This document shows positions 693 to 59,880 of a stretch of DNA of 61,799 nucleotides, one piece after another. Under the pieces are notes generated by a model. The model made no database searches. It saw only the letters and a list, made by a program, of their open reading frames with translations, and was not told the origin of the DNA. How positions within the stretch are numbered: the first letter of the stretch is position 1; the number at the start of each line of letters is the position of its first letter. The position numbers and the translations under genes are program-made. The stretch comes from Octopus sinensis (lineage: Eukaryota). Where the stretch lies: the NCBI RefSeq assembly GCF_006345805.1, contig NW_021833106.1, positions 1 to 61,799 of the forward strand. Reading direction: 5' to 3'.

Positions 693-1723
693 TCAGATTG
701 AATAGAATGTTAGTAACGTTTTGAACCATGAAGAGCTTGTACTGGATTTTTGCAGAGTTTTGAATTTTTTTAAACATTTTTTTTTTTTGCAATTGTCTGG
801 TAATACAGACATAGACTTGCCAAAATGCATCATTAAATTAACATTTTATATGTTTTTCACCGTTGTTACAATCATCTGAAATGGAACTGTCGAAGCATGA
901 TATTTGAGCATTTTTGCTATTCAACTTAAAAAAAGACGTAATGCAGCTGAAATTGCTCGTGCTATCAATGAAACGTTTGATGTGGAAATGACCAGTGAGT
1001 GGTCAGCCCGAAAATGGTTTAAACGACTTTGCAGTAGTGACCTCAGCCTTGAAGATCAAGAGCGTAGTGGACGCCCATCTGTCATTGATGACGGTCAATT
1101 AAAGACTGTCATTGAGAAAGATCCTCGTAAAACCACTCGAGAACTGGCAAAAGAACTTCAAATTAGCCAGAAAACTAACTGCAACCATTTGCATGCATCG
1201 GAAAATTTAAAAAAAAGTTCGACAAATGGGTACCACACGATTTGAATACAATTCAGAAATGTGCGGATATGAAATTTGCTCGTTGCTTCTTCTCTGTAAC
1301 CAGACCGATCCATTTCTCGACCGTATGGTAACTTGCGATGAAAAGTGGATTCTGTACGATAATAAAAAGCGTTCTTCGCAGTGGTTGTGTACCAAAATGA
1401 AGCACCGAAAACCTTCCCTAAACCGAAGCTCTTCAAAAAGAAGGTAATGGTGACTGTTGGGTGGTGTACTGCTGGTCTCATCCACTATAACTTCTGAAGC
1501 CCCCACAAAAAACCATTACTGCAGAAACATATTGCCATGAAATTGCAATGAAATTGCCAAAATGAACGAAAAACTGCTACTCCTCCGTCACAGACTGGTT
1601 AACCGAAGAGGGTCAATCATACTTCATGGCAATGCTCAACCACACGCTTCGCTAATGACGCTCCAGAAGTTGAGGGAATGTGGCTACGAAGTTTCTCCCC
1701 ACCCAGCTTATTCCCCAGACCTT
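693..1723 (+). mobile_element. Decayed mariner (DD34D-type) transposon, 3'-truncated, with frameshifted transposase from about 881
   Basis: Fragments NAAEIARAINE..WFKR..LEDQERSGRP, WVPHDL, FLDRMVTCDEKWILYDN and ILHGNAQPH..HPAYSPDL are mariner motifs. TA followed by the TIR-like TCAGATTGAATAGAATGTTAGTAACG at 691-718. Has stops and frameshifts and ends at YSPDL. Confidence 0.92.
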
Positions 1724-1884
1724 TTATTATTATTTTATATCATATATACATATCGTACAAATCCACAATACAGTAACGATGCCCCATTCATTGTCAGAGA
1801 AGACCGATAAGTAATAAAGGTCAACATTAAGTCACTTTAATAAATGATTTAGAAAACAGTGATACTATACACACACACACACGC

Positions 1885-1933
<49 letters not shown>

Positions 1934-2539
1934 ACACACACCGATTAAATTTCGACAATCACGTAACACCTCCATCACCTCATCCTCGCCATCACTACAA
2001 ATCATTCGTCTCCCGCATCACCATCACCACCAGCATGAAGCCGACATTGTCACAGGTTCCAGTATGAAGTAATACATACGTGTGTACAATCAGATTAAGT
2101 CACCGTCGAGACCTCTAACATCCCCTAACAACATGATTAACGACAACACGGGGCCCGAGCCAACGAAGCTGTTCCATATGTGGTTTCTCCAACCACAAGA
2201 AATAACAGTCAAATATCTTTCGAAGTGCGAGCTGCTATCTTTGAACGGGAAAGGAAACCTTAAATAATGTATCCTTTGATAAGCTATTCCTTAAACAGTA
2301 CCGCAGCGAAAGAGTAGAAGCCAGGGAGTGGTCCGCCTCAGGCAAAGATTTTATAGGGGAGGGGCGACACTTTTGGGGATGCGGTATAAGCCTATAATGA
2401 CCGTACGGGAGCGAACTGAAGGGCTGACCTGGGTGGCACACACTTTAATTGCGCCTCTCTCCTGCAAAATCCCGCTAGAATATATTTGATCGATAACGTC
2501 ACCATGATGAACATCATGCCACGGCGGGCATTCACCACT

Positions 2540-3300
2540 ATCCATACCACCAGCACACCACCAACAACAACAACAAAATCATCACTACCCATACCACCAG
2601 CACCACCACCACCAACAACAACAACAAAATCATCACTACCTATACCACCAGCACCAGCACCACCAACAACAACAACAAAATCATCACTACCCATACCACC
2701 AGCACCACCACCACCAACAACAACAACAAAATCACCACTACCCATACCACCACCACCAACAACAACAACAAAATCACCATTACCCATACCACCAGCACCA
2801 CCACCAACAGCAACAAAAAAAATCACCACTACCCATACCACCAGCACACCAAGAACAACAACAACAAAATCACCACTACCCATACAACCACCACCACCAA
2901 CAACAACAACATCAACAAAATTACCACTAACCATACCACCAGTACCACCAACAACGCCACCGTTATCACCACCAACGATACCACCAACAACAGCATCAAC
3001 ACTAACCTCACTGCTACCACCAATACCTACAACAACACTACGATTGGCAGCTTCACCACCACCGACAACACCATCACCGCAACTAAAATTAAGACAACCA
3101 CAACCACCTCCACCACCACCACCACCACCAACCTCAGTAACAAAAGCAACAACAGCAACTCTACCAATGGTAACACCATTAACTTCACCAACACCACACC
3201 ACCACCACCATCATCCATACCAGAAACATCACCAACAAAACACCACCACTGCTAAATCTAACACTGCCATCACCACCGGCGACAAAAAAATAACATCACC
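2540..3300. repeat. Cryptically simple (ACC/AAC) minisatellite with ~55-60 bp units
   Basis: Unit CCACCAACAACAACAACAAAATCATCACTACCCATACCACCAGCACCA recurs about 6 times, then degenerates. Confidence 0.85.
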
Positions 3301-4551: not shown

Positions 4552-4589
<38 letters not shown>

Positions 4590-5142
4590 GAGTGAGAGAG
4601 CAGTTCATGCCATCAAAGTGACACTGGGATAAAATATACGAAGCCCAATATACCCATCATGACTACCCGTCTGATAAGGATACACCAGGCACTTGCATCA
4701 CAACCATATGTGCGCGACATGGTGATCTCATATCAAGATAAACAGCACATGACCTAGCAGGTGGGGCCCAGTTAGAATTTTCTTCAGGTTGAGTAGCCCA
4801 TCCCGCTCAAAAGGTCCCTGAATAAGGGTTGTTTAAGGATGTTAAAGAATCACCCATGTTTCCAGAGGTGAATTATTCAAACCCCAAAGAATCCCTCTCA
4901 ACACATGGCTATGATGCTCCCCCACTACTTCTGCTCGTGATCAGAGATGCACATATCGTCAGCCACTAAGGGACATGCTCAACTGGTTAAGGTCAAACAA
5001 CTGACAAGCAAATCTGTGGTATTGAGCAGAATATTTGCTGTAGCCCATCTTTTATACTAAGACAAAACAATGTACATGATAACACTTCCAATCAGTTAAG
5101 ATAAGAAGCCATGAGAGCCACTGCCTGGTACTGCATCAGGGC
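4590..5142 (-). mobile_element. ~550 bp retroposon copy 1 with (AAT)n tail, probably a LINE 3' end or derived SINE
   Basis: Second copy at 5241-5737. On the minus strand it ends ...CTCTCTCACTC followed by (AAT)n, and it is flanked by triplet microsatellites. Confidence 0.7.
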
Positions 5143-5199: not shown

Positions 5200-5239
<40 letters not shown>

Positions 5240-5240
5240 A

Positions 5241-5737
5241 AGAGAGCAGAACAAGCCATCAAAGTGACACTGGAGTAAAATATACGAAGCCCAATATACC
5301 CATCATAACTACCTGTCTGATAAGAGTACACCAGGCACATGCATCACAACCATGTGTGCGCGACATGGTGATTTCATATCTAGATAAACAGCGCATGACC
5401 TTGCAGGTGGGCCTCAGAATTTTTTTCAGGTCGAGTAGCTCATCCTGCTCAAATGGTCCTTGAATAAGCGTTGTTTAAGAATGTTGAAAAAGCACCTATG
5501 ATTCCCCTCAACACATGGCTATGATGCTCCCCAACTAGTTCTGCTCGTGATCAGAGATGCACATATCATCAGCCACTAAGGGACATGCTCAACTGGTTAA
5601 GGGACATGCTCAACTGACAAGCAAATCTGTGGTATTGAGCAGAATATTTGCTGTAGCCCGTCTTTTATACCAAGACAAAGCAATATACATGATAACACTT
5701 CCAATCAGTTACGATCAGAAGCTATGAGAGCCAGTGC
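5241..5737 (-). mobile_element. ~500 bp retroposon copy 2, with internal deletions and a 21-bp tandem duplication
   Basis: Colinear with 4590-5142; GGGACATGCTCAACTG occurs twice at 5581-5616. Confidence 0.7.
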
Positions 5738-10378: not shown

Positions 10379-11134
10379 CTATGTTACATCCTTAATTACT
10401 TACAATTTGTAGTCCAATCGTTGCTAAATTGTTTATTCTTTATTTTACAGTTTGAAAATGAATGGTGGAAGAAAAAATGCAATTGGAAACGGTTTACGCT
10501 GCCTGAGGCAAAATGAACCGAGTGCAAGGGCAACGACAAAAGAAACTGATGATGTGAAAAGCCCAGGAACTGTCCAGGAACATGTAGCACCAAACTGACT
10601 CAGACATTTCAAGAAAAGTAACATATGTACATACATTCATACATACATACATACGATTTGCCAATTTGCGCAAAAGATAAAAATACCTGTCAACAAATTT
10701 ACACAAAAACTTAGAAATACACCGTTTCTCGGAGGAAAAGCAAAGGAAACTGGCGTGGATTCTCCAAATCCAATCTATTACTAGCGCCGGGAAGATTTGT
10801 ATGACATTCAAAAAAAATGTTCCATCTGAGATTCTTGCATGAATGGATGCACACACTTGAGTGTATGCATCGACAACGCACCAACTCAACCACATATTTA
10901 CTACCACCGGGAACTCTCTTCACTTAAAAAGTCTTGTCGCTTTGTTAGCGGCCGACTTGAACTCTCTCAAAGAAAATTATTACATACACATAGATAGATA
11001 TGAAAATTATAAAAATCTTTTTTTCATATATCTATTTGATAGATATTTGAAGAGGGATTTTCATCATCATAATTTGAACAAAATAAAACAAAAATTTAAA
11101 CAAACAACAAGTACACGGTATCTTATGCTTTATA

Positions 11135-11367
11135 AGGCAGCGAGCTGGCAGAAACGTTAGAACGCCGGGCGAAATGCTTACCGGTATTTCGTCTGCCGCT
11201 GCGTTCTGAGTTCAAATTCCGCCGAGGTCGACTTTGCCTTTCATCCTTTAGGGGGTCGATAAATTAAGTAGCAGTTACGCACTGGGGTCGATGTAATCGA
11301 TTTCATCCGTTTGTCTGTCCTTGCTTGTCCCCTCTGTGTTTAGCCCCTTCTGGGTAGTAAAGAAGTA
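11135..11367 (+). mobile_element. tRNA-derived SINE, family B, with 18-bp TSD
   Basis: TSD GGTATCTTATGCTTTATA at 11117-11134 and 11368-11385; B-box GAGTTCAAATTCC. Confidence 0.92.
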
Positions 11368-13839: not shown

Positions 13840-14487
13840 CATCATCATTCCCATCCTCATCATTCCCATCCTCCTCATTCCCATCCTCATCATTCCCATC
13901 ATCATCATTATCCTCGTTATCGCCATCGTTGTTGCCGCAATAATCGTAGCTGTCGTCGTCGTCATCGTCATCATCATTACCATCGTTACCACCACCAACA
14001 CCACCTCTATCACCACTACTATCACCACTACTATCAACACCACTATCACCACCATCACCACCATCACCACCATTACCACGTCAACCGCCTTCATCATTAT
14101 TGATATCATCATTATCATCATTGTCACCACCACAACCATTCTCCTCCTCCTCACCACCACCACCACCACCACCACCATCACCACTACCACCACCATCACC
14201 ACCACCGTTACCACGTCAACCGCCATCATCAGTACTGATGTCTTCATTATCATCATTGTCACCACCACAACCATCCTTCTCCTCCTCCTCCTCCTCACCA
14301 CTACTACCACCACCAACACCACCACTATCACCACCACCACCATCACCACCACCACCACCACCACCACCACCATCACCACTACCACCACCACCACCTCCAC
14401 CATTACCACGTCAACCGCCATCATCAGTATTGATGTCATCATTATCATCATTGTCACCACCACAACCATCCTCCTCCTCGTCCTCCT

Positions 14488-16298: not shown

Positions 16299-16692
16299 GA
16301 AGGCAGCAAGCTGGCAGAAACGTTAGCACTCCGGGCGAAATGCTTAGCAGTATTTCGTCTGTCGCTACGTTCTTAGTTCAAATTCCGCCGAGGTCGACTA
16401 TGCCTTTCATCCTTTCGGGGGTCAATTAAATAAGTACCAGTTACGCACTGGGGTCGATATAAACGACTTAATCCGTTTGTCCTCTCTGTGGGTAGTAAAG
16501 AAATAGGTATTTGGTCTGCCGGTATTTCGTTCTGAGTTGAAATTCCGCTGAGGTCGATTTTGCCTGTCATCCTTTCGGGGTCGATAAATTAAGTACCAAT
16601 CACGCACTGGGGTCGATGTTATCGACTTAATCCCTTTGCCTATCCTTATTTATCCCCTCTATGTTTAGTCCCTTGTGGGCAATAAAGAAATA
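16299..16692 (+). mobile_element. SINE family B dimer inside one TSD pair
   Basis: A full unit plus a 5'-truncated second unit, flanked by AGAAA(C/T)GTAAAGAAAT at 16283-16298 and 16693-16708. Confidence 0.85.
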
Positions 16693-20270: not shown

Positions 20271-20503
20271 TATTTCTTTACTACCCATAAGGGGCTAAAC
20301 ACAGAGAGGACAAACAAGGACAGACAAAGGGATTAAGTCGATTACATCGACCCCAGTGCGCAACTGGTACTTAATTTATCCACCCCGAAAGGATGAAAGG
20401 CAAAGTCGACCTCGGCGGGATTTGAACTCAGAACGTAACGGCAGACGAAATACGGTCACGCATTTCGCCCGGCGTGCTAACGTTTCTGCCAGCTCGCCGC
20501 CTT
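20271..20503 (-). mobile_element. SINE family B, full length
   Basis: Reverse complement of 11135-11367. Confidence 0.92.
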
Positions 20504-21338
20504 GTAAGCACTAATATACATGTGTGTTTGCATGAGTGCGCAGATGTGTGTGGTGTGTCCCCAAAAATTGTATAGAGTACATACAAACGGAACATGCCAT
20601 ACTTAGAAAGTCACAAAATCTTTACCAGTAATAGTCAAAAGCATTGTAACAATTTCACGATGATAACTGATGAAGATTTAGCGACTTCTGTGTGTACCCG
20701 TATTTTCCGTTTGATCCGTTTGTTCGTACATTGACTCTCAGGGACTAATTCACTAATCCACCCCGACATCCGAAACTCGGAGTTTTATCATGGCTACCGA
20801 GTAATTGTCACATATTACATTCACAGATAAATTCCTCTATTTACGTAATATCGAGGTCTCTTTCATTCTTTTGTTGTCTTACCATTTCTATCAATATACC
20901 TTCGAAACACGGAGTAGACGAAACAGAGGCGGCTGAAGAAGGGGAATTTTCCTTGTGTTGTATGTCTTGTACTCTGTTTTTTCGTTGTTTAAAAAAATGT
21001 CCGTTTCCATGGTTTTGTTTTTATGTTTTCGTTTCTCATTGTGTTAGACGTTTTTTTGGTGTCCTGTTCCCATATATGCATGTATATATACATATAGATG
21101 TAGGTACGTACATATATGTATGTAGATATGCGTATGTTTTATTTATTATTTTGTTATATATATATATATACAGGCACTAATAGAGAATGACTCTCCAAAA
21201 ACACAATAGAATGTGCTTCAACACACGAATTCACAAAAATAATCTTGAAAACCAATTAAAAACTAAATACATATAAATCAATATATTTATTCATGCACAT
21301 ACATATACACAACACACATATACGGCCAGCCAACCCCC

Positions 21339-28324: not shown

Positions 28325-28985
28325 AAGGGTGATTAGATAATTTATTTACGTATCTGGTAACTTCACCCTCCTTTCTAAATGGGTGATATAACTTTGAATT
28401 TAAGTATAAGGTAACGTCTAAAAAGTTAACTATCTTGGTGTTATATTCATAAGTAATGCCTAAGTTGAAATCTTTGAAAAATCTACTAATTTTCTTTCTT
28501 ATTCTCTCAATTACCGATTTATTATTACTAGGTACGATAAATAAAGCATCATCTCTATATAATCCCCCTTGCAATTCGGGATTTCTCTACTTATGCATTT
28601 TAATGAATACGCTCCTACTAAATTAGTTATCTCCGCCGAATCACTTGAGCCCATGGGTATATCGAAATTATTCGGGGTATCCGCTCTAGTCCACAATTTT
28701 CCTTCAAATTCAATGATAGTTTTCCTAGCTAATAAAATAATATCAATTTCTCCCCTAGTTATGAGAGAGGTTTTTTATAGCGAAAATGAGTGATTTATTA
28801 AGGAGAATAGGGGATATGCTGGAATAGTAGTTGTTAATGTCAAATTGGATGAAAGAAATTCTATTATTATTATTTAAAGATTTAAACCAATCGTTGTGAC
28901 CATTTTGCATTGACCCAGTTCTCTTGATATAAAATCTAATTACCAAATGAGAGTAAACTCTGAATTTTCTTTAGGAATAACTTCT
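28325..28985 (-). mobile_element. Penelope-like element reverse transcriptase fragment (frameshifted)
   Basis: Three consecutive minus frames give FIQFDINNYYSSIS, NFDIPMGSSDSAEITNLVG and GLYRDDALF..VNFLDVTL..YHPFRKE..YVNKLSNHP, the PLE RT motifs in order. Confidence 0.92.
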
Positions 28986-35406: not shown

Positions 35407-35702
35407 AAGGCGGTGAGCTGCCAGAAACATTAGCACGCCGGGTGAAATGCTTAGCGGTATTTCGTCTGCCGTTACGTTCTGATTTCAAATTACGATGAGG
35501 TCGACTTTGCCTTTCATCCTTTCGGCGTCGATTAAATAAGTACCAGTTATGCACTGGGGTCGATATAATCGACTCAATCCGTTTGTCTGTCCTTGTTCGT
35601 TCTCTCTGTGTGTAGCCCCTTGTGGGTAGTAAAGAAATAGGTATTTCGTCTGTCTTTACGTTCCGAGTTCAAATACCGCCGAGGACGACTTTGCCTTTCA
35701 TC
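35407..35702 (+). mobile_element. SINE family B plus the start of a B2 unit (continues at 37044-37170)
   Basis: The B2 unit is interrupted at CTTTCATC by the 35703-37043 insertion. Confidence 0.85.
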
Positions 35703-38258: not shown

Positions 38259-38320
<62 letters not shown>

Positions 38321-38515
38321 GGTTAATCCAAACATGAAAACACAAAGAGAAAACACAACAACGCGAGGACGTGGAACAAGTATAGTATTATTGGACGCTC
38401 AGGAAAGGAAAGAATGAAGGAGGATTTAACGTTTCGAGCGGAGCTCTTCGTCAGAAATATAGGAAAAGAAAAGATCAAAGGAAGGGAAGACGAAGAAAAA
38501 AAATCGCCAACGGTA
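38321..38515 (-). mobile_element. (TA)n-anchored short element, family F (PLE pseudo-LTR-like, hammerhead-bearing)
   Basis: Homologous to 47714-47904; its 3' end on the minus strand abuts (TA)n at 38301-38320. Confidence 0.8.
38424..38458 (-). ncRNA. Predicted minimal type I hammerhead ribozyme
   Basis: AUUU-CUGACGA-A-GAGC(UCC)GCUC-GAAAC-GUU-AAAU: intact core, extra A after A9, 4-bp stem II, palindromic ACGU stem III, 4-bp stem I. Confidence 0.7.
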
Positions 38516-39139: not shown

Positions 39140-39155
<16 letters not shown>

Positions 39156-39430
39156 GGTGGCTTTAGGGGGTGATAAGGGTGATGATGATGGTACTGATGG
39201 TGCTGATGATAGTGACGGTAGTAGTGGTGGTGGTTTTAGTGTTGTGGTGGTTGTGTGGTGGTGGTGGTGGTGGTAGTGGTGGTGGTGGTGGTGGTGGTGG
39301 TGGTGGCTTTAGGGGGTGATAAGGGTGATGATGATGGTACTGATGGTGCTGATGATAGTGACGGTAGTAGTGGTGGTGGTTTTAGTGTTGTGGTGGTTGT
39401 GTGGTGGTGGTGGTGGTGGTGGTAGTGGTG
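39140..39430 (+). repeat. 146-bp tandem duplication in a (GGT)n-rich tract
   Basis: CTTTAGGGGGTGATAAGGG.. at 39161 and 39307. Confidence 0.9.
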
Positions 39431-39885
39431 GTGGTGGTGGTGGTTGTGGTGGTGGTGGTAGTACTATTTGCGGTATTGGTGGTGGCGCATGCTGGTATTG
39501 GTGATTGTACAACCCGGCAAGCACAACACAAGATTAATGAAAGTACAAGATTAATGAATGTACTATTTATCATTTCAAATTCCGGGATCGATTAAATGAA
39601 TACCAGTTGAGAACTGGGGTCGCTGTAATCGACTAGAGCCCTCCCTAAAAAATTCAGGCTTTGTGCCTAAAATAGAAAGGATTATTTACTATTTCCGGTG
39701 TACCGGAATACATAAATTCGTTTCCGCAATCCACTGTCTGGAGAGACGTTGCTCGCCTCGCTTAGTTATATACTGTGCTTTTAACACGACATGACTATGA
39801 TTAGGTTTTCTCTTAAACAGAAACCACAGTATCAAATTTTTTCAATGGTGTGTATAAGTTAAGTATGTACACATATGGTTATATA

Positions 39886-40125: not shown

Positions 40126-40381
40126 AATATATTGATTGTTTATTGTTTTCCTACATGTCAGAGGCAACAAATTTCGTCTAAGCATGGCATTTGGCTGTAT
40201 GAGTAAACACGAATATATATATATATATATATAATATAATATATATATATATATATATAATTATATATGTATATGTTGTGTGTGTGTGTGGTGTGTGTGT
40301 GGTGTATGTATATATATATACGTATAAAATATGAGATGAAAGGTCCAAAACTTTTATGTGTTATATAAACAGTGAATAAGC

Positions 40382-40412
<31 letters not shown>

Positions 40413-40549
40413 ATATATATATATTGTAAAAAGGGCATTATTACACATAAATGCCTCACACTAGGAGGGACAAAGTCATTACTACCAAAAATTATACTAA
40501 TCATACCCAAATGCAGTTTTTCAAAGCAAGACATTTAAAAATGAATTAT

Positions 40550-40605
40550 GTTCTGTATCACCGTGATTTCACATACAACTTGCGTCTAATGATCGTCAGC
40601 AGAAC
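40550..40605 (-). ncRNA. Predicted type I hammerhead ribozyme, array copy L1
   Basis: GUUCUG CUGACGA UCAUUAGAC GCAA GUUGUAUGU GAA AUCAC G GUGAU A CAGAAC; consensus-intact. Confidence 0.82.
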
Positions 40606-41026
40606 TGATTCTGAATACATCATAAATAAACCAACCTTATGTAGCGAAGACGAACAGACAACTGTTCAACTCCGGCCAAGCACATGGAATGTTTATAAAT
40701 CATATATCCGGTAAATGGCGGGCTTTTTTACGAACTGCATGTCGGGTAATGAAAAGTATTTCGGAATAAGTTTAACAATTAAGGATAATCTCTTAATAAG
40801 GGATCTTAACAAGAAATTATCGGGTAGCTAGCGTGAAAACCTCATAAAAGAAAAGATCCGAAAATATTTTTCTTTTGAACAAATTAATTATATACTCTAT
40901 ATGTATAAAGGGCATTATTACACATAAATGCCTCACACTAGGAGGGACAAAGTCATTACTACCAAAAATTATACTAATCATACCCAAATGCAGTTTTTCA
41001 AAGCAAGACATTTAAAAATGAATTAT

Positions 41027-41082
41027 GTTCTGTATCACCGTGATTTCACATACAACTTGCGTCTAATGATCGTCAGCAGAAC
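41027..41082 (-). ncRNA. Predicted hammerhead, copy L2
   Basis: Identical 56-nt motif. Confidence 0.82.
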
Positions 41083-41496
41083 TGATTCTGAATACATCAT
41101 AAATAAACCAACCTTATGTAGCGAAGACGAACAGACAACTGTTCACTCCGGCCACACATGGAATGTTTATAAATCATATATCCGGTAAATGGCGGGCTTT
41201 TTTACGAACTGCATGTCGGGTAATGAAAAGTATTTCGGATAAGTTTAACAATTAAGGATAATCTCTTAATAAGGGATCTTAACAAAAATTATCGGGTAGC
41301 TAGCGTGAAAACCTCATAAAAAAAGAATCCGAAAATATTTTTTTCTTTTGAACAAATTAATTATATCTATATTGTATAAAGGGCATTATTACACATAAAT
41401 GCCTCACACTAGGAGGGACAAGTCATTACTACCAAAAATTATACTAATCATACCCAAATGCAGTTTTTCAAAGCAAGACATTTAAAAATGAATTAT

Positions 41497-41553
41497 GTTC
41501 TTGTATCACCGTGATTTCACATACAACTTGCGTCTAATGATCGTCAGCAGAAC
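41497..41553 (-). ncRNA. Predicted hammerhead, copy L3 (1-nt insertion in stem I)
   Basis: Plus strand GTTCTTGTATC versus consensus GTTCTGTATC. Confidence 0.75.
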
Positions 41554-41973
41554 TGATTCTGAATACATCATAAATAAACCAACCTTATGTAGCGAAGACG
41601 AACAGACAACTGTTCACCTCCGGCCAAGCACATGGAATGTTTATAAATCATATATCCGGTAAATGGCGGGCTTTTTTACGAACTGCATGTCGGGTAATGA
41701 AAAGTATTTCGGAATAAGTTTAACACATTAAGGATAATCTCTTAATAAGGATCTTAACAAGAAATTATCGGGTAGCTAGCGTGAAAACCTCATAAAAGAA
41801 AAGAATCCGAAAATAATTTTTTTCTTTTGACAAATTAATTATATCTATATTGTATAAAGGGCATTATTACACATAAATGCCTCACACTAGGAGGGACAAA
41901 GTCATTACTACAAAAATTATACTAATCATACCAAATGCAGTTTTTCAAAGCAAGACATTTAAAAATGAATTAT

Positions 41974-42029
41974 GTTCTGTATCACCGTGATTTCACATAC
42001 AACTTGCGTCTAATGATCGTCAGCAGAAC
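41974..42029 (-). ncRNA. Predicted hammerhead, copy L4
   Basis: Identical 56-nt motif. Confidence 0.82.
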
Positions 42030-42445
42030 TGATTCTGAATACATCATAAATAAACCAACCTTATGTAGCGAAGACGAACAGACAACTGTTCACTCCGCCA
42101 AGCACATGGAATGTTATAAATCATATATCCGTAAATGGCGGGCTTTTTTACGAACTGCATGTCGGGTAATGAAAAGTATTTCGGAATAAGTTTAACAATT
42201 AAGGATAATCTCTTATAAGGGATCTTAACAAGAAATTATCGGGTAGCTAGCGTGAAAACCTCATAAAAGAAAAGAATCCGAAAATAATTTTTTTCTTTTG
42301 AACAAATTAATTATATCTATATTGTATAAAGGGCATTATTACATAAATGCCTCACACTAGGAGGGACAAAGTCATTACTACCAAAAATTATACTAATCAT
42401 ACCCAAATGCAGTTTTTCAAAGCAAGACATTTCAAAATGAATTAT

Positions 42446-42501
42446 GTTCTGTATCACCGTGATTTCACATACAACTTGCGTCTAATGATCGTCAGCAGAA
42501 C
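42446..42501 (-). ncRNA. Predicted hammerhead, copy L5
   Basis: Identical 56-nt motif. Confidence 0.82.
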
Positions 42502-42923
42502 TGATTCTGAATACATCATAAATAAACCAACCTTATGTAGCGAAGACGAACAGACAACTGTTCACTCCGGCCAAGCACATGGAATGTTATATAATCATAT
42601 ATCCGGTAAATGGCGGGCTTTTTTACGAACTGCATGTCGGGTAATGAAAAGTATTTCGGAATAAGTTTAACAATTAAGGATAATCTCTTAATAAGGGATC
42701 TTAACAAGAAATTATCGGGTAGCTAGCGTGAAAACCTCATAAAAGAAAAGAATCCGAAAATAATTTTTTTCTTTTGAACAAATTAATTATATCTATATTG
42801 TATAAAGGGCATTATTACACATAAATGCCTCACACTAGGAGGGACCAAGTCATTACTACCAAAAATTATACTAATCATACCCCAATGCAGTTTTTCAAAG
42901 CAAGACATTTAAAAATGAATTAT

Positions 42924-42979
42924 GTTCTGTATCACCGTGATTTCACATACAACTTGCGTCTAATGATCGTCAGCAGAAC
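42924..42979 (-). ncRNA. Predicted hammerhead, copy L6
   Basis: Identical 56-nt motif. Confidence 0.82.
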
Positions 42980-43354
42980 TGATTCTGAATACATCATAAA
43001 TAAACCAACCTTATGTAGCGAAGACGAACAACCCGACTGTCACTCCGGCCAAGCACATGGAATGTTTATAAATCATATATCCGGTAAATGGCGGCTTTTT
43101 TACGAACTGCATGTCGGGTAATGAAAAGTATTTCGGAATAAGTTTAACAATTAAGGATAATCTCTTATTAAGAGATTATCCTTAATTGTTAACTTATTCC
43201 GAAATACTTTTCATTACCCGACATGCAGTTCGTAAAAAGCCCGCCATTTACCGGATATATGATTTATAACATTCCATGTGCTTGGCCGGAGTGAACAGTT
43301 GTCTGTTCGTCTTCGCTACATAAGGTTGGTTTATTTATGATGTATTCAGAATCA

Positions 43355-43410
43355 GTTCTGCTGACGATCATTAGACGCAAGTTGTATGTGAAATCACGGT
43401 GATACAGAAC
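43355..43410 (+). ncRNA. Predicted hammerhead, copy R1 (cleavage after 43404)
   Basis: GTTCTGCTGACGATCATTAGACGCAAGTTGTATGTGAAATCACGGTGATACAGAAC. Confidence 0.82.
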
Positions 43411-43825
43411 ATAATTCATTTTTAATGTCTTGCTTTGAAAAACTGCATTTGGGTATGATTAGTATAATTTTTGTAGTAATGACTTTGTCCCTCCTAGTGT
43501 GAGGCATTTATGTGTAATAATGCCCTTTATACAATATAGATATAATTAATTTGTTCAAAAGAAAAAAATTATTTTCGGATTCTTTTCTTTTATGAGGTTT
43601 TCACGCTAGCTACCCGATAATTCTTGTTAAGATCCCTTATTAAGAGATTATCCTTAATTGTTAAACTTATTCCGAATACTTTTCATTACCCGACATGCAG
43701 TTCGTAAAAAGCGCCGTTTACCGGATATATGATTTATAAACATTCCATGTGCTTGGCCGGAGTGAACAGTTGTCTGTTCGTCTTCGCTACATAAGGTTGG
43801 TTTTTATTTGATGTATTCAGAATCA

Positions 43826-43881
43826 GTTCTGCTGACGATCATTAGACGCAAGTTGTATGTGAAATCACGGTGATACAGAAC
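43826..43881 (+). ncRNA. Predicted hammerhead, copy R2 (cleavage after 43875)
   Basis: Identical 56-nt motif. Confidence 0.82.
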
Positions 43882-44302
43882 ATAATTCATTTTTAAATGT
43901 CTTGCTTTGAAAAACTGCAATTGGGTATGATTAGTATAATTTTTGGTAGTAATGACTTTGTCCTCCTAGTGTGAGGCATTTATGTGTAATAATGCCCTTT
44001 ATACAATATAGATATAATTAATTTGTTCAAAAGAAAAAAATTATTTTCGGATTCTTTTCTTTTATGAGTTTTCACGCTAGCTACCCGATAATTTCTTGTT
44101 AAGATCCCTTATTAAGAGATTATCCTTAATTGTTAAACTTATTCCGAAATACTTTTCATTACCCGACATGCAGTTCGTAAAAAGCCCGCCATTTACCGGA
44201 TATATGATTTATAAACATTCCATGTGCTTGGCCGGAGTGAACATGTTTGTCTGTTCGTCTTCGCTACATAAGGTTGGTTTATTTATGATGTATTCAGAAT
44301 CA

Positions 44303-44357
44303 GTTCTGCTGACGATCATTAGACGCAAGTTGTATGTGAATCACGGTGATACAGAAC
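44303..44357 (+). ncRNA. Predicted hammerhead, copy R3 (GAAA reads GAA)
   Basis: One A missing in the homopolymer; a likely sequencing error or an inactive copy. Confidence 0.65.
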
Positions 44358-44774
44358 ATAATTCATTTTTAAATGTCTTGCTTTGAAAAACTGCATTTGG
44401 GTATGATTAGTATAATTTTTGGTAGTAATGACTTTGTCCCTCCTAGTGTGAGGCATTTATGTGTAATAATGCCTTTATACAATATAGATATAATTAATTT
44501 GTTCAAAAGAAAAAAATTATTTTCGGATTCTTTTCTTTTATGAGGTTTTCACGCTAGCTACCCGATAATTTCTTGTAAGATCCCTTATTAAGAGATATCC
44601 TTAATTGTTAAACTTATTCCGAAATACTTTTCATTACCCGACATGCAGTTCGTAAAAAGCCCGCCATTTACCGGATATATGATTTATAAACATTCCATGT
44701 GCTTGGCCGGAGTGAACAGTTGTCTGTTCGTCTTCGCTACATAAGTGGGTTTTATTTATGATGTATTCAGAATC

Positions 44775-44830
44775 GTTCTGCTGACGATCATTAGACGCAA
44801 GTTGTATGTGAAATCACGGTGATACAGAAC
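44775..44830 (+). ncRNA. Predicted hammerhead, copy R4 (cleavage after 44824)
   Basis: Identical 56-nt motif. Confidence 0.82.
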
Positions 44831-45249
44831 ATAATTCATTTTTAAATGTCTTGCTTTGAAAAACTGCATTTGGGTATGATTAGTATAATTTTTGGTAGTA
44901 ATGACTTTGTCCCTCCTAGTGTGAGGCATTTATGTGTAATAATGCCCTTATACAATATAGATATAATTAATTTTTTCAAAGAAAAAAATTATTTTCGGAT
45001 TCTTTTCTTTTATGAGGTTTTCACGCTAGCTACCCGATAATTTCTTGTTAAGATCCCTTATTAAGAGATTATCCTTAATTGTTAAACTTATTCCGAAATA
45101 CTTTTCATTACCCGACATGCAGTTCGTAAAAAAGCCGCCATTTACCGGATATATGATTTATAAACATTCCATGTGCTTGGCCGGAGTGAACAGTTGTCTG
45201 TTCGTCTTCGCTACATAAGGTTGGTTTATTTATGATGTATTCAGAATCA

Positions 45250-45305
45250 GTTCTGCTGACGATCATTAGACGCAAGTTGTATGTGAAATCACGGTGATAC
45301 AGAAC
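45250..45305 (+). ncRNA. Predicted hammerhead, copy R5 (cleavage after 45299)
   Basis: Identical 56-nt motif. Confidence 0.82.
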
Positions 45306-45724
45306 ATAATTCATTTTTAAATGTCTTGCTTTGAAAAACTGCATTTGGTATGATTAGTATAATTTTTGGTAGTAATGACTTTGTCCATCCTAGTGTGAGG
45401 CATTTATGTGTAATAATGCCCTTTATACAATATAGATATAATTAATTTGTTCAAAAGAAAAAAATTATTTTCGGATTCTTTTCTTTTATGAGGTTTTCAC
45501 GCTAGCTACCCGATAATTTCTTGTTAAGATCCCTTATTAAGAGATTATCCTTAATTGTTAAAACTTATCCGAAATACTTTTCATTACCCGACATGCAGTT
45601 CGTAAAAAGCCCGCCATTTACCGGATATATGATTTATAAACATTCCATGTGCTTGGCCGGAGTGACAGTTGTCTGTTCGTCTTCGCTACATAAGGTTGGT
45701 TTATTTATGATGTATTCAGAATCA

Positions 45725-45780
45725 GTTCTGCTGACGATCATTAGACGCAAGTTGTATGTGAAATCACTTGTGATACAGAC
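45725..45780 (+). ncRNA. Predicted hammerhead, copy R6 (variant loop III and stem I)
   Basis: AUCAC UU GUGAU A CAGAC; core intact. Confidence 0.7.
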
Positions 45781-46038
45781 ATAATTCATTTTTAAATGTC
45801 TTGCTTTGAAAAACTGCATTTGGGTATGATTAGTATAATTTTTGGTAGTAATGACTTTGTCCCTCCTAGTGTGAGGCATTTATGTGTAATAATGCCCTTT
45901 ATACAATAGAAGATATAATAATTTGTTCAAAAGAAAAAAATTATTTTCGGATTCTTTTCTTTTATGAGGTTTTCACGCTAGCTACCCGATAATTTCTTGT
46001 TAAGATCCCTTATTAAGAGATTATCCTTAATTGTTAAA

Positions 46039-46088
<50 letters not shown>

Positions 46089-46553
46089 CGTGTGAGGATA
46101 AAATTTAGCTCGCTAAATAAATATAGCTTCTGTACTTACTTCCGTTTCACTTACGCCAAGGTAGACTTACGAAAATGATAAAATAAGTATCAAAGTCGAT
46201 GTAATCAACGAATTCTTTGAAGGTTTGTTGCTCTAACATGGCCAGAGAGTAATGAGTAAAAAAAATAAGAAGAAAAATTAGAAAAAATAAAATGAAGTGA
46301 AGTGTGACGTCAGCCGGTTGTGATAGTCTGCTTGTGGCTCAGTATAAATCTTGGCTTTGATCTGATAAGAGTCTGCTTATGTCGGCAGGTGGACAACAGT
46401 TCCGTTTTTTTTATTAACTGGTTTCATTCGTAAGACTTCCTTTAGTAAGTTCGTGTTGAGTAGAACAGTGTATGTATGCATGTACGTATACATATTTATG
46501 TACAAGTATATATACATATATGGATATATACATATATATATATATATAGGGGG

Positions 46554-47713: not shown

Positions 47714-47904
47714 TACCGTTGGCGATTTTTTTCCCTCTGACTTCCCTTCTCTGGATCTTTCCTTCTCCTATGTTTCCGACGAAGAGCTCCGCTCGAAACG
47801 TTAAATCCTCCTTCTTTCCTTCTTTCCTGAGCGTCCAATAATACTTTATTTGTTCCACGTCCTCGCGTTGCTGTTTTTTTTTTGTGCTTTCTTGTTTGGA
47901 TTAA
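47714..47904 (+). mobile_element. (TA)n-anchored family F element
   Basis: Homologous to 38321-38515; followed by (TA)n. Confidence 0.8.
47772..47806 (+). ncRNA. Minimal hammerhead-like motif with U4->C change
   Basis: GUUU-CCGACGA-A-GAGC(UCC)GCUC-GAAAC-GUU-AAAU. Confidence 0.55.
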
Positions 47905-47920
47905 TTTTATATAATATATC

Positions 47921-47948
<28 letters not shown>

Positions 47949-47952
<4 letters not shown>

Positions 47953-48051
47953 ATCCAAACAAGAAGCACAAAAAAACACAACAACGCGAGGACGTGGGAC
48001 ATATATAGTAATTATTGGACGCTCAGGAAAGAAGGAAAGAAGGAGGATTTA
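47949..48051 (-). mobile_element. Partial family F copy, tail-to-tail with 47714-47904 across (TA)n
   Basis: GTTAATCCAAACAAG..CGCGAGGACGTGG..GGACGCTCAGGAAAG..GGAGGATTTA. Confidence 0.8.
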
Positions 48052-54474: not shown

Positions 54475-54890
54475 TATGACGAACGTCTTTCGATTTCCGT
54501 TTACCAAAACCAGATCACAAGGCTTTAGTCTGCCCGAGGCTGTAGTAGAAAACACTTTTCCCAAGACGGCGAACTGGCAGAAACGTTAGCACGCCGGGCG
54601 AAATGCTTAGCGGTATTTCGTCTGCCGCTACGTTCTGAGTTCAAATTTTGCCGAGGTCGACTTTACCTTTCATCCTTTCGGGGTCGATTAAATAAGTACC
54701 AGTTACGCACTGGAGTCGATATAATCGACTTAATTCGTTTCTCTGTCCTTGTTTGTCCCCTCTATGTTTAGCCCCTTGTGGGTAGTAAAGAAATAAGAAG
54801 ACACTTTTCCAAGGTGCCACGCAGTGGGACTGAACCCAGAACTATGAGGTTGGGAACTTAAGCTCTCACCACACAGCCATGCCTGCGCCT
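54261..54890 (-). mobile_element. SINE family A interrupted by a family B insertion
   Basis: The family A sequence resumes after the TSD at 54796. Confidence 0.85.
54566..54795 (+). mobile_element. SINE family B nested in SINE A, with ~18-bp TSD
   Basis: AGAAAACACTTTTCCCAAG (54547-54565) and AGAAGACACTTTTCCAAG (54796-54813). Confidence 0.9.
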
Positions 54891-59183: not shown

Positions 59184-59642
59184 TATTCAATTCCATTTTC
59201 ATTTTTATTTTATGTACATTTTAAATATTTGTATATATATAATTATAATTTAGTATCTATGTTACGAAATTATATTTATATATGTAATTCGTTATCACTT
59301 TCATTTCATTTTTGTTTTAAATATTTCAAATATATTGTTTAATTATATTTCTATACTTACGTTATAACGAATTATATATATATATATTTTATGTATAGGA
59401 ATTTGTCATCCAGACATGGAAAATCTTAAGATTTTTTAGTATTTTAAAATAATTTAGCTTTAAATGGTCTTTCAAACATTGGAATCATTGGATAAATATA
59501 TTTCATTCTAATTTAAATATTTCTCTCTTTTCGTCTCTCCCCCCTCTCTTTTTCCCTTTTCCTCTTCCTCACCACCTCTCTATCCCCCTCTTTCTCTCTC
59601 TTTATACGCACACGTACGTACGTATGTATATATGAATGTATG

Positions 59643-59880
59643 AAGGTGGCGAGCTGGTAGAAACGTTAGCACGCCGGGCGAAATGCTTAGCAGTATATCG
59701 TCTGCCGCTACGTTCTGAGTTCAAATTCCGCCGAGGTCGACTTTGCCTTTCATCCTTTCGGGGTCGATTAAATAAGTAGCAGTTACGCACTGGGGTCGAT
59801 GTAATCGACTTAATCCGTTTTTCTGTCCTTGTTTGTCCTCTCTGTGTTTAGCCCCTTGTGGGTAGTAAAGAAATAGGTAT
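59643..59880 (+). mobile_element. SINE family B, full length, followed by (GTAT)n
   Basis: Near-consensus copy. Confidence 0.92.

What the first reader, a model, noticed from the sequence alone, without database searches (positions are those of the whole stretch)
40420..46043. Apparent satellite is a hammerhead-bearing, retrozyme-like multimer (12 ribozymes, ~478-nt monomer)
Seen: about 12 near-identical monomers, each with the 56-nt motif GUUCUG-CUGACGA-[UCAUUAGAC GCAA GUUGUAUGU]-GAA-AUCAC G GUGAU-A/CAGAAC. That gives a perfect 6-bp stem I, the full CUGANGA and GAAA core, a stem II closed by a GNRA loop, a 5-bp stem III and an AUA (NUH) cleavage triplet. Stem I can extend past an internal loop (GAAU/AUUC), where type I hammerheads make their tertiary contact with loop II. 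Established: metazoan non-LTR retrozymes are tandem monomers of a few hundred nt with one type I hammerhead each; their transcripts self-cleave to unit length and circularise, and they are thought to borrow an RT in trans. Inference: this is such an element, with a rather long monomer, in a probable cephalopod. I do not recognise it as a described family.
Basis: partly seen in the sequence, partly recalled or inferred. Interest (0 to 1): 0.95.

Follow-up and report, generated by a model that had tools for sequence, protein, structure and literature searches.

The report
Hammerhead retrozyme repeat in octopus DNA
A 5.6-kb block of 477-bp repeats in an octopus-like genome carries a complete hammerhead self-cleaving RNA motif in every unit, so it looks like a new example of the known animal "retrozyme" mobile elements, arranged unusually as two head-to-head arrays inside a (TA)n microsatellite.

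Summary
The block 40414-46043 is two head-to-head half-arrays of about six units each. The ribozyme is on the - strand left of 43165 and on the + strand right of it, and (TA)n tracts flank both sides. All 12 units carry the motif: 9 are exact and 3 have small lesions, mostly homopolymer indels that look like assembly noise.

The motif has the full hammerhead core and type I topology. Helix II is long, with a U.U at its base and an internal loop. Monomeric helix III has 4 bp, not 5. No Rfam hammerhead model matches it, probably because it resembles the Penelope-like-element (PLE) hammerhead variants. A loose descriptor hits only the array.

The unit RNA is strongly structured on the ribozyme strand only (z about -6 against -3). 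GC is 33%, and no coding capacity was detected. The source genome is octopod.

I found no diverged copies anywhere, so there is no covariation evidence, and cleavage is untested.

Verdict: probably a non-LTR retrozyme, a new member of a known kind. The PLE-style insertion architecture is a modestly interesting extra. Interest is about 0.4, not 0.95.

The parts
40414..43165 (-). Left half-array: about 5.8 units of the 477-bp repeat, ribozyme strand is -. Its 5' end is at the centre and its 3' end runs into (AT)n.
43166..46043 (+). Right half-array: about 6.1 units, ribozyme strand is +. Its 5' end is at the centre and its 3' end runs into (TA)n.
43152..43178 (.). Head-to-head junction (GGATAATCT[CTTA]TTAAGAGATTATCC). 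The two arms overlap by 4 nt (CTTA) inside the monomer's own 9-nt palindrome CTTATTAAG.
40382..40424 (.). (AT)n microsatellite abutting the left arm. The arm ends after ...CAATATA, giving microhomology with the microsatellite.
46041..46086 (.). (TA)n microsatellite abutting the right arm. The arm ends after ...AAACTTAT, giving microhomology with the microsatellite.
43355..43410 (+). Hammerhead copy, exact. Helix I 43355-60 / 43405-10; core C3-A9 43361-67; helix II 43368-89; G12-A14 43390-92; helix III 43393-403; A17 at 43404; predicted cleavage between 43404 and 43405. The helix I extension spans 43349-52 / 43414-17.
43826..43881 (+). Hammerhead copy, exact.
44303..44357 (+). Hammerhead copy with GAAA changed to GAA (one A lost from an A-run). 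It would be inactive if the change is real.
44775..44830 (+). Hammerhead copy with the exact 56-nt motif. Loop 1 upstream is CA changed to C.
45250..45305 (+). Hammerhead copy, exact.
45725..45780 (+). Hammerhead copy with loop 3 changed from CGG to CTTG and the helix I 3' strand changed from CAGAAC to CAGAC.
42924..42979 (-). Hammerhead copy, exact.
42446..42501 (-). Hammerhead copy, exact.
41974..42029 (-). Hammerhead copy, exact.
41497..41553 (-). Hammerhead copy with a 1-nt insertion in the helix I 3' strand (CAAGAAC).
41027..41082 (-). Hammerhead copy, exact.
40550..40605 (-). Hammerhead copy, exact.
44825..45299 (+). One predicted unit-length RNA, cleavage site to cleavage site, 475 nt. 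MFE is -124.2 kcal/mol with z = -5.65. Helix I closes a long branched quasi-rod.

Best explanation
This is a non-autonomous, non-LTR retrozyme-type element in an octopod genome.

Shown:
- Each 477-bp unit encodes one type I hammerhead.
- Within each half-array the units lie head-to-tail.

Inferred:
- Transcripts of a half-array would fold the ribozyme, either alone (4-bp helix III) or as a double hammerhead through the near-palindromic helix III.
- They would cut after A17 (GUGAUA/C) and release 471-478-nt units with 5'-OH and 2',3'-cyclic phosphate ends.
- By analogy with published retrozymes, a host RtcB-type tRNA ligase would then close these units into highly self-paired circles.
- The locus architecture is what a PLE-type, twin-primed, target-primed reverse transcription of such a circle by rolling-circle copying would leave. 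That architecture is two arrays with their 5' ends abutting at a 4-nt microhomology inside a monomer palindrome, 3' ends at different monomer positions, each merging into a (TA)n tract by microhomology, and about 6 units per arm.
- The ribozyme's helix II also resembles the variants found in PLE pseudo-LTRs. It is long, has unpaired U residues at its base and has an internal loop. This fits the view that animal retrozymes derive from PLEs and are mobilised by them.
For: - All conserved hammerhead positions are present in the right topology.
- The hammerhead fold is within 1.2 kcal/mol of the local MFE, and a helix III dimer duplex scores -13.9 kcal/mol.
- A loose type I descriptor gives 9 hits, all in the array and none elsewhere in the window. 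It gives 0.01 hits per shuffled 56 kb and 0.0005 per shuffled monomer. An even looser descriptor finds nothing outside the array.
- The unit RNA has z = -6.3 linear and -5.3 circular on the ribozyme strand, against -2.8 and -3.0 on the complement. The dedicated tool gives -5.65 against -2.86 on a genomic unit.
- GC is 33%. The unit ORFs have no homologues. No ribozyme of any Rfam family is on the opposite strand.
- The junction and outer ends were dissected. Perfect (AT)>=10 tracts cover only 1.4% of the window, yet both array ends abut one.
- Literature:
  - Animal retrozymes are tandem repeats of 150-450 bp, with low GC, type I hammerheads and self-paired circular RNAs, including 350-390-bp units in mussel.
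  - Consensus lengths run from 51 to 972 bp and most families have at most 7 units.
  - A U.U mismatch at the base of helix II occurs in the axolotl HHR_Amex2.
  - PLE hammerheads have a large helix II, an unpaired nucleotide at its 5' end and a palindromic helix III.
  - PLE insertions form partial tandems plus an inverted 5'-truncated copy at the 5' end, with a microsatellite or (TA)n bias.
Against: - No Rfam hammerhead model reports the motif, even at E<=10 on a 121-nt stretch.
- The isolated 86-nt ribozyme region folds no better than shuffles (z = +1.08).
- The 10.1/11.1 position is U.U rather than the usual G-C, and helix II has only 6 standard pairs in 9 layers. Activity could be low.
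- There are no diverged copies, so there is no covariation or conservation evidence.
- Variation within the array is not depleted in the ribozyme (7 of 80 events in 68 of 486 columns, p = 0.2).
- No PLE RT/GIY-YIG ORF was recognised in the window.
- The head-to-head layout could equally come from a DNA-level fold-back duplication or from misassembly.
Confidence: 0.68

Rival explanations
1. This is an ordinary minisatellite or satellite DNA whose unit happens to contain a hammerhead-like string, or a decayed one. There is no catalysis and no RNA life cycle, and the array grew by unequal exchange.
For: - No Rfam hammerhead match.
- The local ribozyme fold is not better than shuffles.
- Helix II is imperfect, with U.U at its base.
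- No sign of selection on the motif among the copies.
- No other copies were found.
- The genome is extremely rich in tandem repeats.
Against: - The chance of even a loose type I motif in a shuffled unit is 0.0005.
- The real motif is much stricter than that descriptor: 6-bp helix I plus a 4-bp extension, and a 4-bp palindromic helix III.
- The strong, strand-specific RNA structure of the unit is not expected of plain satellite DNA.
- Unit size, GC content, one ribozyme per unit and the PLE-like helix II all match published retrozymes.
Confidence: 0.15
2. The ribozyme repeat is real, but the head-to-head layout is not an insertion signature. It arose either by a DNA-level fold-back inverted duplication at the short palindrome CTTATTAAG within a pre-existing array, or as a long-read assembly artefact.
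For: - The junction sits exactly on a monomer palindrome, the classic substrate for fold-back priming.
- The arms are as similar in mirror register (96.7%) as any two units.
- Most differences between units are homopolymer-type indels (36 of 46 indel events), which suggests an error-prone long-read assembly.
- A second palindromic repeat pair lies about 1.9 kb away, so this region is prone to inverted structures.
Against: - The arms end at different monomer positions (about 186 and about 313 from C3) and differ in length, 2752 against 2878 bp.
- The flanks outside the (TA)n tracts are unique apart from one 215-bp repeat at 87% identity. The structure is therefore not a simple mirror extending into the flanks or a contig-end fold-back.
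- Having the 5' ends at the centre is the specific topology described for PLE insertions.
Confidence: 0.3
3. The array is the pseudo-LTR part of a decayed autonomous Penelope-like element, not a separate non-autonomous family.
For: - The helix II features are PLE-like.
- The tandem/inverted architecture and microsatellite target are PLE-like.
- Retrozymes and pLTRs are reported to be homologous in Xenopus.
Against: - There is no RT or GIY-YIG coding sequence within or next to the array.
- About 6 complete units per arm, with nothing between them, is a retrozyme layout rather than pLTR-ORF-pLTR.
- Helix I (6 bp plus loop 1) and helix III (4 bp) are more canonical than the minimal PLE hammerheads.
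Confidence: 0.1

Closest known systems
Metazoan non-LTR retrozymes (Cervera & de la Pena, NAR 2020; e.g. the Mytilus galloprovincialis 350-390-bp repeats)
   Same: Both are head-to-tail repeats of a few hundred bp with one type I hammerhead per unit, low GC, no LTR/PBS/PPT, no ORF, and a highly self-paired unit RNA. The host is also a mollusc.
   Different: - The unit is 477 nt, above the 170-400 nt seen in that study but inside the 51-972 bp range.
- Helix II is long and interrupted.
- Helix III is longer: 4 bp against 1-2 bp.
- The locus is two inverted arrays.
- Expression and circularity were not tested here.
Axolotl HHR_Amex2 retrozyme hammerhead
   Same: Both have a U.U mismatch at the base of helix II and a helix III more stable than in the newt-type motif.
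   Different: There is no sequence relationship. The octopus helix II is much longer, and the loop 1/loop 2 contact nucleotides are not evident.
Minimal or variant hammerheads in pseudo-LTRs of Penelope-like elements (Cervera & de la Pena, MBE 2014)
   Same: [quoted passage not shown]
   Different: Here helix I is canonical (6 bp plus loop 1 plus a closing stem) and helix III has 4 bp, so a monomeric ribozyme is plausible. No PLE ORF is associated with it.
PLE insertion architecture and LINE-1 twin priming
   Same: Both show partial tandems plus an inverted 5'-truncated copy abutting the 5' end and a microsatellite or (TA)n target bias. Twin priming likewise leaves 5' ends joined at a microhomology; that comparison rests on my own knowledge of Ostertag & Kazazian 2001.
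   Different: In this locus both arms are multimeric arrays of a non-coding unit, which implies rolling-circle copying of a circular template. As far as I could find, this has not been described for retrozymes.
Newt satellite 2 and Schistosoma Sm-alpha hammerhead repeats
   Same: Both are genomic tandem or dispersed repeats that each carry a type I hammerhead, with dimeric activity through a palindromic helix III (otherwise my own knowledge).
   Different: Those have the canonical 4-bp helix II with conserved loop contacts and are recognised by Rfam. This one is not.

Membership tests
Hammerhead ribozyme, type I | Conserved core C3-U4-G5-A6-N7-G8-A9 ... G12-A13-A14, the A15.1-U16.1 pair, and H17 not G | tested here: met
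   CUGACGA / GAA / A...U / A17 in 9 exact copies.
Hammerhead ribozyme, type I | Three helices around the core, with helix I open and helices II and III closed by loops | tested here: met
   Helix I has 6 bp plus a 4-bp extension. Helix II has 6 pairs in 9 layers plus a GCAA loop. Helix III has 4 bp plus a CGG loop. The fold scores -10.5 against an MFE of -11.7 kcal/mol. The 10.1/11.1 position is U.U, which has a precedent.
Hammerhead ribozyme, type I | Match to the curated covariance models (Rfam Hammerhead_1, Hammerhead_3, Hammerhead_II, HH9, HH10) | tested here: not met
   No hammerhead family was listed at gathering score, at E<=10 on 5.9 kb, or at E<=10 on 121 nt. The likely reason is the PLE-like long, interrupted helix II, but I could not test that.
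Hammerhead ribozyme, type I | Loop 1 / loop 2 tertiary contact | tested here: inconclusive
   An internal loop (CA/AUA) lies 6 bp from the core in helix I. Helix II is too long for the canonical loop 2 contact, though its own internal loop sits at a similar height. The mussel retrozyme hammerheads also lack the archetypal contacts and still cleave.
Hammerhead ribozyme, type I | Helices supported by covariation in diverged relatives | tested here: inconclusive
   No diverged copies were found in the window, in metagenome or viral contigs, or in the protein collections via unit ORFs. The copies within the array are too similar to be informative.
Hammerhead ribozyme, type I | Site-specific Mg2+-dependent self-cleavage | not testable with these tools
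   This needs in vitro transcription.
Metazoan non-LTR retrozyme | Head-to-tail tandem repeats of roughly 50-1000 bp, each with one type I hammerhead | tested here: met
   Two arrays of about 6 units of 471-478 bp, with one motif per unit.
Metazoan non-LTR retrozyme | Low GC content, no LTR/PBS/PPT, and non-coding | tested here: met
   GC is 33%. The longest unit ORFs are 62-105 aa and have no homologues. No tRNA or other RNA family was found in the unit. I did not search for PBS or PPT motifs explicitly.
Metazoan non-LTR retrozyme | Unit RNA predicted to be stable and highly self-paired | tested here: met
   z = -6.3, -5.3 and -5.65 on the ribozyme strand, against about -3 on the complement.
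Metazoan non-LTR retrozyme | Expressed as unit-length linear and circular RNA | not testable with these tools
   No transcriptome access.
Metazoan non-LTR retrozyme | Multiple dispersed loci in the genome (mobility), and co-occurrence with PLEs | not testable with these tools
   There is only one locus in the 62-kb window, and two unrelated octopus loci lack it. The whole genome is not searchable here. Cephalopods are reported to carry PLE (Naiad) remnants.
Autonomous Penelope-like element | ORF encoding an RT plus a GIY-YIG endonuclease between pseudo-LTRs | tested here: not met
   No such ORF is in or beside the array. The RT-like fragment 12 kb away is not recognised as an RT by Pfam.
Autonomous Penelope-like element | Insertion architecture: partial tandem plus an inverted 5'-truncated copy at the 5' end, with a microsatellite target | tested here: met
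   The arrays are head-to-head with their 5' ends at 43165/43166, and (TA)n lies on both sides.
Plant LTR retrozyme | Type III hammerheads in direct LTRs, with PBS, PPT and 4-bp TSDs | tested here: not met
   The topology is type I and every unit is identical, so there is no LTR/central-region organisation.
Viroid-like or HDV-like circular RNA agent | Ribozymes in both polarities, or a delta-antigen ORF, and no DNA stage | tested here: not met
   The ribozyme is on one strand only and no other ribozyme family was found. There is no ORF homologue. The element is embedded in genomic DNA with unique flanks.

The most novel reading that the evidence does not exclude
The locus is a fossil of a single integration event. 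In that event, both 3' ends of a staggered break in a (TA)n microsatellite primed rolling-circle reverse transcription of a 477-nt retrozyme circle by a PLE-type RT/endonuclease. The two multimeric cDNAs were then joined at a monomer palindrome. On this reading, retrozyme arrays are born multimeric at insertion rather than growing later by unequal exchange. The reading would also give structural evidence that PLE machinery mobilises retrozymes. A read-through transcript of the whole locus would form a 2.7-kb-arm hairpin RNA, a potential small-RNA source against the family.
Probability: 0.3. Interest if true: 0.6.

Novelty: new member of a known kind. Interest (0 to 1): 0.4.

Why it matters
If the motif is active, this extends genome-encoded hammerhead circular-RNA elements to cephalopods. 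No paper I could search describes one there. It also adds a ribozyme that combines canonical helices I and III with a PLE-type helix II, and such variants escape Rfam-based annotation.

The twin head-to-head arrays inside a (TA)n tract give a concrete, testable link between retrozyme integration and the unusual Penelope-like integration mechanism. So far that link rests mainly on co-occurrence and on pLTR homology in vertebrates.

The class itself is already known to be widespread in animals, so this is an incremental addition and does not change the current picture.

Tried and rejected
1. **Rfam, three ways**. No hammerhead family was found. The only hits are sub-threshold plant miRNA and snoRNA models, produced by the perfect hairpin at the palindrome centre and by AT-rich sequence. 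I rejected them as artefacts.
2. **Diverged copies in the window by sensitive blastn**. None were found.
3. **Exact look-up of two unit ORFs in public assemblies**. Neither is on record.
4. **Word-indexed homology search with the 105-aa antisense unit ORF**. No candidate was found.
5. **Exhaustive HMMER search with the 101-aa sense ORF**. It returned two weak hits to bacterial repeat-rich surface proteins, which are spurious.
6. **Pattern scans of metagenome and viral contigs**. The pattern fixing core, helix I and helix III gave 0 hits.
7. **A looser pattern fixing the core and the helix II base**. It gave 52 and 1 hits, which is roughly what I would expect by chance for 19 specified bases. 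None resembles the unit, and the few that pass the loosest descriptor have all-wobble helices.
8. **Synteny with Octopus sinensis and O. bimaculoides loci holding the RT-like homologue**. They are not syntenic and share only dispersed repeats, so I obtained no orthologous or empty site.
9. **Within-array variation as a test of selection**. It is uninformative: the variation is mostly homopolymer indels and is not depleted in the ribozyme.
10. **The RT-like fragment at 28.3 kb as a possible PLE**. Pfam does not confirm an RT, so it is left as a side note.
11. **The inverted flank match at 38301 / 47714 as a possible sign of a larger palindrome**. It is a separate fold-back, MITE-like repeat at 87% identity and is not part of the array.

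Full report
**1. What is in the sequence**

Tandem Repeats Finder reports two adjoining arrays rather than one. The first spans 40414-43176 (period 477, 5.8 copies, 97% matches) and the second spans 43160-46043 (period 476, 6.1 copies). Zero matches are expected by chance.

Reading 43000-43600 shows the reason for the split. The repeat reverses orientation at a palindrome centre at 43165/43166. The left arm is 40414-43165 and carries the ribozyme on the - strand. The right arm is 43166-46043 and carries it on the + strand. Their 5' ends therefore abut in the middle.

Unit spacings are 471-478 bp, the consensus is 477 nt, and pairwise identity is 95-98%. Nine of the 12 motifs are exact. The copy at 44303 has lost one A from GAAA. 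The copy at 45725 has an altered loop 3 and a 1-nt deletion in helix I. The copy at 41553 has a 1-nt insertion in helix I. One exact copy has a 1-nt deletion in loop 1.

Across the ten full units I counted 34 substitutions and 46 indel events against the consensus. Thirty-six of the indels lengthen or shorten a homopolymer. That pattern looks more like long-read assembly noise than divergence. The three lesions may therefore not be real, and the copies say nothing about selection: 7 of 80 events fall in the 68 ribozyme columns out of 486, p = 0.2.

**2. Is the motif a hammerhead?**

Every conserved position is present. These are C3-A9 (CUGACGA, 43361-67), G12-A14 (43390-92), A15.1 and U16.1 (43393 and 43403), and H17 = A (43404).

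- Helix I is a perfect 6 bp. Beyond a CA/AUA internal loop there is a 4-bp GAAU/AUUC extension, which RNAfold also predicts.
- Helix III cannot be 5 bp in a monomer, because that would leave a 1-nt loop. It is 4 bp with a CGG triloop. The near-palindrome AUCACGGUGAU can instead pair between two ribozymes (duplex -13.9 kcal/mol), giving the double-hammerhead form.
- Helix II is weaker than described. It has U.U at 10.1/11.1, then 3 bp, a 2x2 internal loop, 3 bp, and a GCAA loop.

The full hammerhead fold scores -10.5 kcal/mol against an MFE of -11.7 for the same 74 nt. The isolated region is no more stable than shuffles, with z = +1.08.

A deliberately loose type I descriptor of my own finds nine hits, all in the array. 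It requires the core, GAAA, at least 3 of 4 pairs at the base of helix II, at least 2 bp in helix III, 5 bp in helix I, and H17. It averages 0.01 hits per shuffled 56 kb and hits 0.05% of shuffled units. A still looser version finds nothing outside the array or in two unrelated octopus loci.

**3. The Rfam result**

No hammerhead family passes the gathering score over the whole window. None is listed at E<=10 over 40300-46200, or at E<=10 over 43320-43440 alone. I record this as a membership feature that was tested and not met.

The literature offers a reasonable explanation. Canonical metazoan type I hammerheads have helix I of 6 bp, helix II of 4 bp and helix III of 1-2 bp. [quoted passage not shown] A U.U at the base of helix II is also described in the axolotl retrozyme motif HHR_Amex2 (PMC7229834).

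The octopus motif combines a canonical helix I with this PLE-type helix II. I could not test directly that this is why the models miss it.

**4. The unit as an RNA**

The 477-nt unit, cut at the predicted site, folds with helix I closing a long branched quasi-rod. On the ribozyme strand z is -6.3 (linear) and -5.3 (circular). On the complement it is -2.8 and -3.0. The dedicated tool, run on a genomic unit at 44825-45299, gives -5.65 against -2.86. This strand asymmetry fits an RNA-level constraint and matches the "stable and highly self-paired" circles described for retrozymes.

GC is 33%. The longest unit ORFs are 62-105 aa and have no relatives. No other ribozyme or RNA family is present on either strand.

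**5. Locus architecture**

The centre junction reads GGATAATCT[CTTA]TTAAGAGATTATCC. The two arms overlap by 4 nt inside the unit's own 9-nt palindrome CTTATTAAG.

The outer (3') ends fall at different unit positions. The left arm stops after ...CAATATA and the right arm after ...AAACTTAT. Each runs straight into a (TA)n tract of 43-46 bp with a few bases of microhomology. Perfect (AT)>=10 tracts make up only 1.4% of the window, so both ends abutting one is unlikely to be coincidence.

The arms are 2752 and 2878 bp long. They are no more similar in mirror register (96.7%) than any two units are. The flanks beyond the microsatellites are unique apart from one 215-bp repeat at 87% identity.

This layout is the one described for PLE insertions: 5' ends together, a tandem organisation and a microsatellite target. 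Those are reported as partial tandems with an inverted 5'-truncated copy adjacent at the 5' end, with a (TA)n or microsatellite bias (PMC8557442). It is also the topology that twin priming leaves, which I state from my own knowledge.

The retrozyme papers I could read do not mention such arrangements. A 2026 preprint argues from co-occurrence and pLTR homology that animal retrozymes are non-autonomous PLE derivatives. It reports consensus lengths of 51-972 bp and at most seven units for most families. The 477-nt unit and about six units per arm are therefore ordinary for the class.

**6. Source organism**

A frameshifted RT-like ORF fragment at 28326-28892 (-) has its best matches in Octopus sinensis (83%) and O. 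bimaculoides (75%). Dispersed repeats in the window match an O. sinensis locus at up to 95.6% identity, but match an O. bimaculoides locus at 85% or less. Neither locus is syntenic with the window. "Probable cephalopod" is therefore supported, most likely the O. sinensis/vulgaris group.

No paper in the searchable library describes a hammerhead or retrozyme from a cephalopod. I could not consult Repbase or Dfam.

**7. Mechanism, with its basis**

Shown:
- Tandem units, each with a complete type I hammerhead motif.
- A unit RNA that is structured on one strand only.
- Two head-to-head arrays between (TA)n tracts.

Inferred from the family:
- Array transcripts self-cleave after A17 into 471-478-nt units, as single or double hammerheads.
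- A host tRNA ligase circularises the units, as found for other retrozymes.
- The circle is copied by an RT supplied in trans.

Inferred from the architecture, with less confidence:
- Both 3' ends of a break in a (TA)n tract primed rolling-circle cDNA synthesis.
- The two multimeric cDNAs were joined at the unit's palindrome.

**8. Rivals**

- A catalytically dead satellite with a chance or decayed motif remains possible, at about 0.15. The arguments for it are the Rfam miss, the weak helix II and the lack of comparative data.
- The inverted layout could come from a DNA fold-back duplication at the palindrome, or from misassembly, at about 0.3 for that sub-question. The unequal arm ends and the unique flanks argue against a simple mirror artefact.
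- A decayed autonomous PLE is unlikely, because there is no ORF between the units.

**9. Verdict**

The element is best filed as a new member of the non-LTR retrozyme kind, with a PLE-flavoured hammerhead. The insertion architecture is worth following up. Interest is 0.4.

Noticed in passing
window 901-1807 (+): A frameshifted mariner/Mos1-like transposase remnant. It has an HTH_48 'HTH domain in Mos1 transposase' hit and typical DDE-region peptides in separate frames.
   Followed up: partly
window 28326-28892 (-): A frameshifted RT-like ORF fragment (YRDD / FLDV motifs). Its homologues are annotated only as uncharacterised proteins in Octopus sinensis (83%) and O. bimaculoides (75%), and some carry a precomputed PF26215 HTH_animal domain. 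Pfam run here does not call it an RT. Whether it is a PLE relative is unresolved.
   Followed up: partly
window 47714-48051 and 38301-38515: A fold-back, MITE-like pair: arms of about 214 and 124 bp in inverted orientation around a (TA)n tract at 47908-47948. A third copy (87-89% identity) lies on the other side of the retrozyme locus. It is a second palindromic structure centred on a TA microsatellite within 2 kb of the array.
   Followed up: partly
window, e.g. 11131-11302, 16300-16468, 20327-20506, 35407-35574, 54563-54732, 59623-59810: A SINE-like dispersed repeat of about 170 bp in at least 8 copies, 80-86% identical to copies in an O. sinensis locus. In translation it gives the recurring '...STPVRNWYLFNRPRKDERQSRP...' peptides.
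   Followed up: no
window 4566-5107 and 5214-5720; L001 18117-18655: A repeat of about 540 bp present twice in the window, matching an O. sinensis locus at 95.6% and 83.5%. This was the best indicator that the source is close to O. sinensis.
   Followed up: no
whole window: Very high microsatellite and minisatellite density: 165 TRF rows in 62 kb. This includes long (TA)n, (TG)n, (AAT)n, (GAT)n and (TGGT)n tracts, and minisatellites of period 51, 135 and 146 bp at 2532-3001, 13970-14349 and 39140-39452.
   Followed up: no
window 43102-43233: The perfect hairpin made by the head-to-head junction scores against the plant miRNA families MIR5512 and MIR1888 on both strands, well below their gathering scores. 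This is an artefact of the palindrome and not a miRNA gene. It does show that a read-through transcript would form a long hairpin RNA.
   Followed up: yes
window 40414-46043: Differences between repeat units are dominated by single-base homopolymer indels (36 of 46 indel events, against 34 substitutions). This suggests the assembly is under-polished in this repeat, so unit lengths and the three 'damaged' ribozymes should be re-checked against reads.
   Followed up: partly
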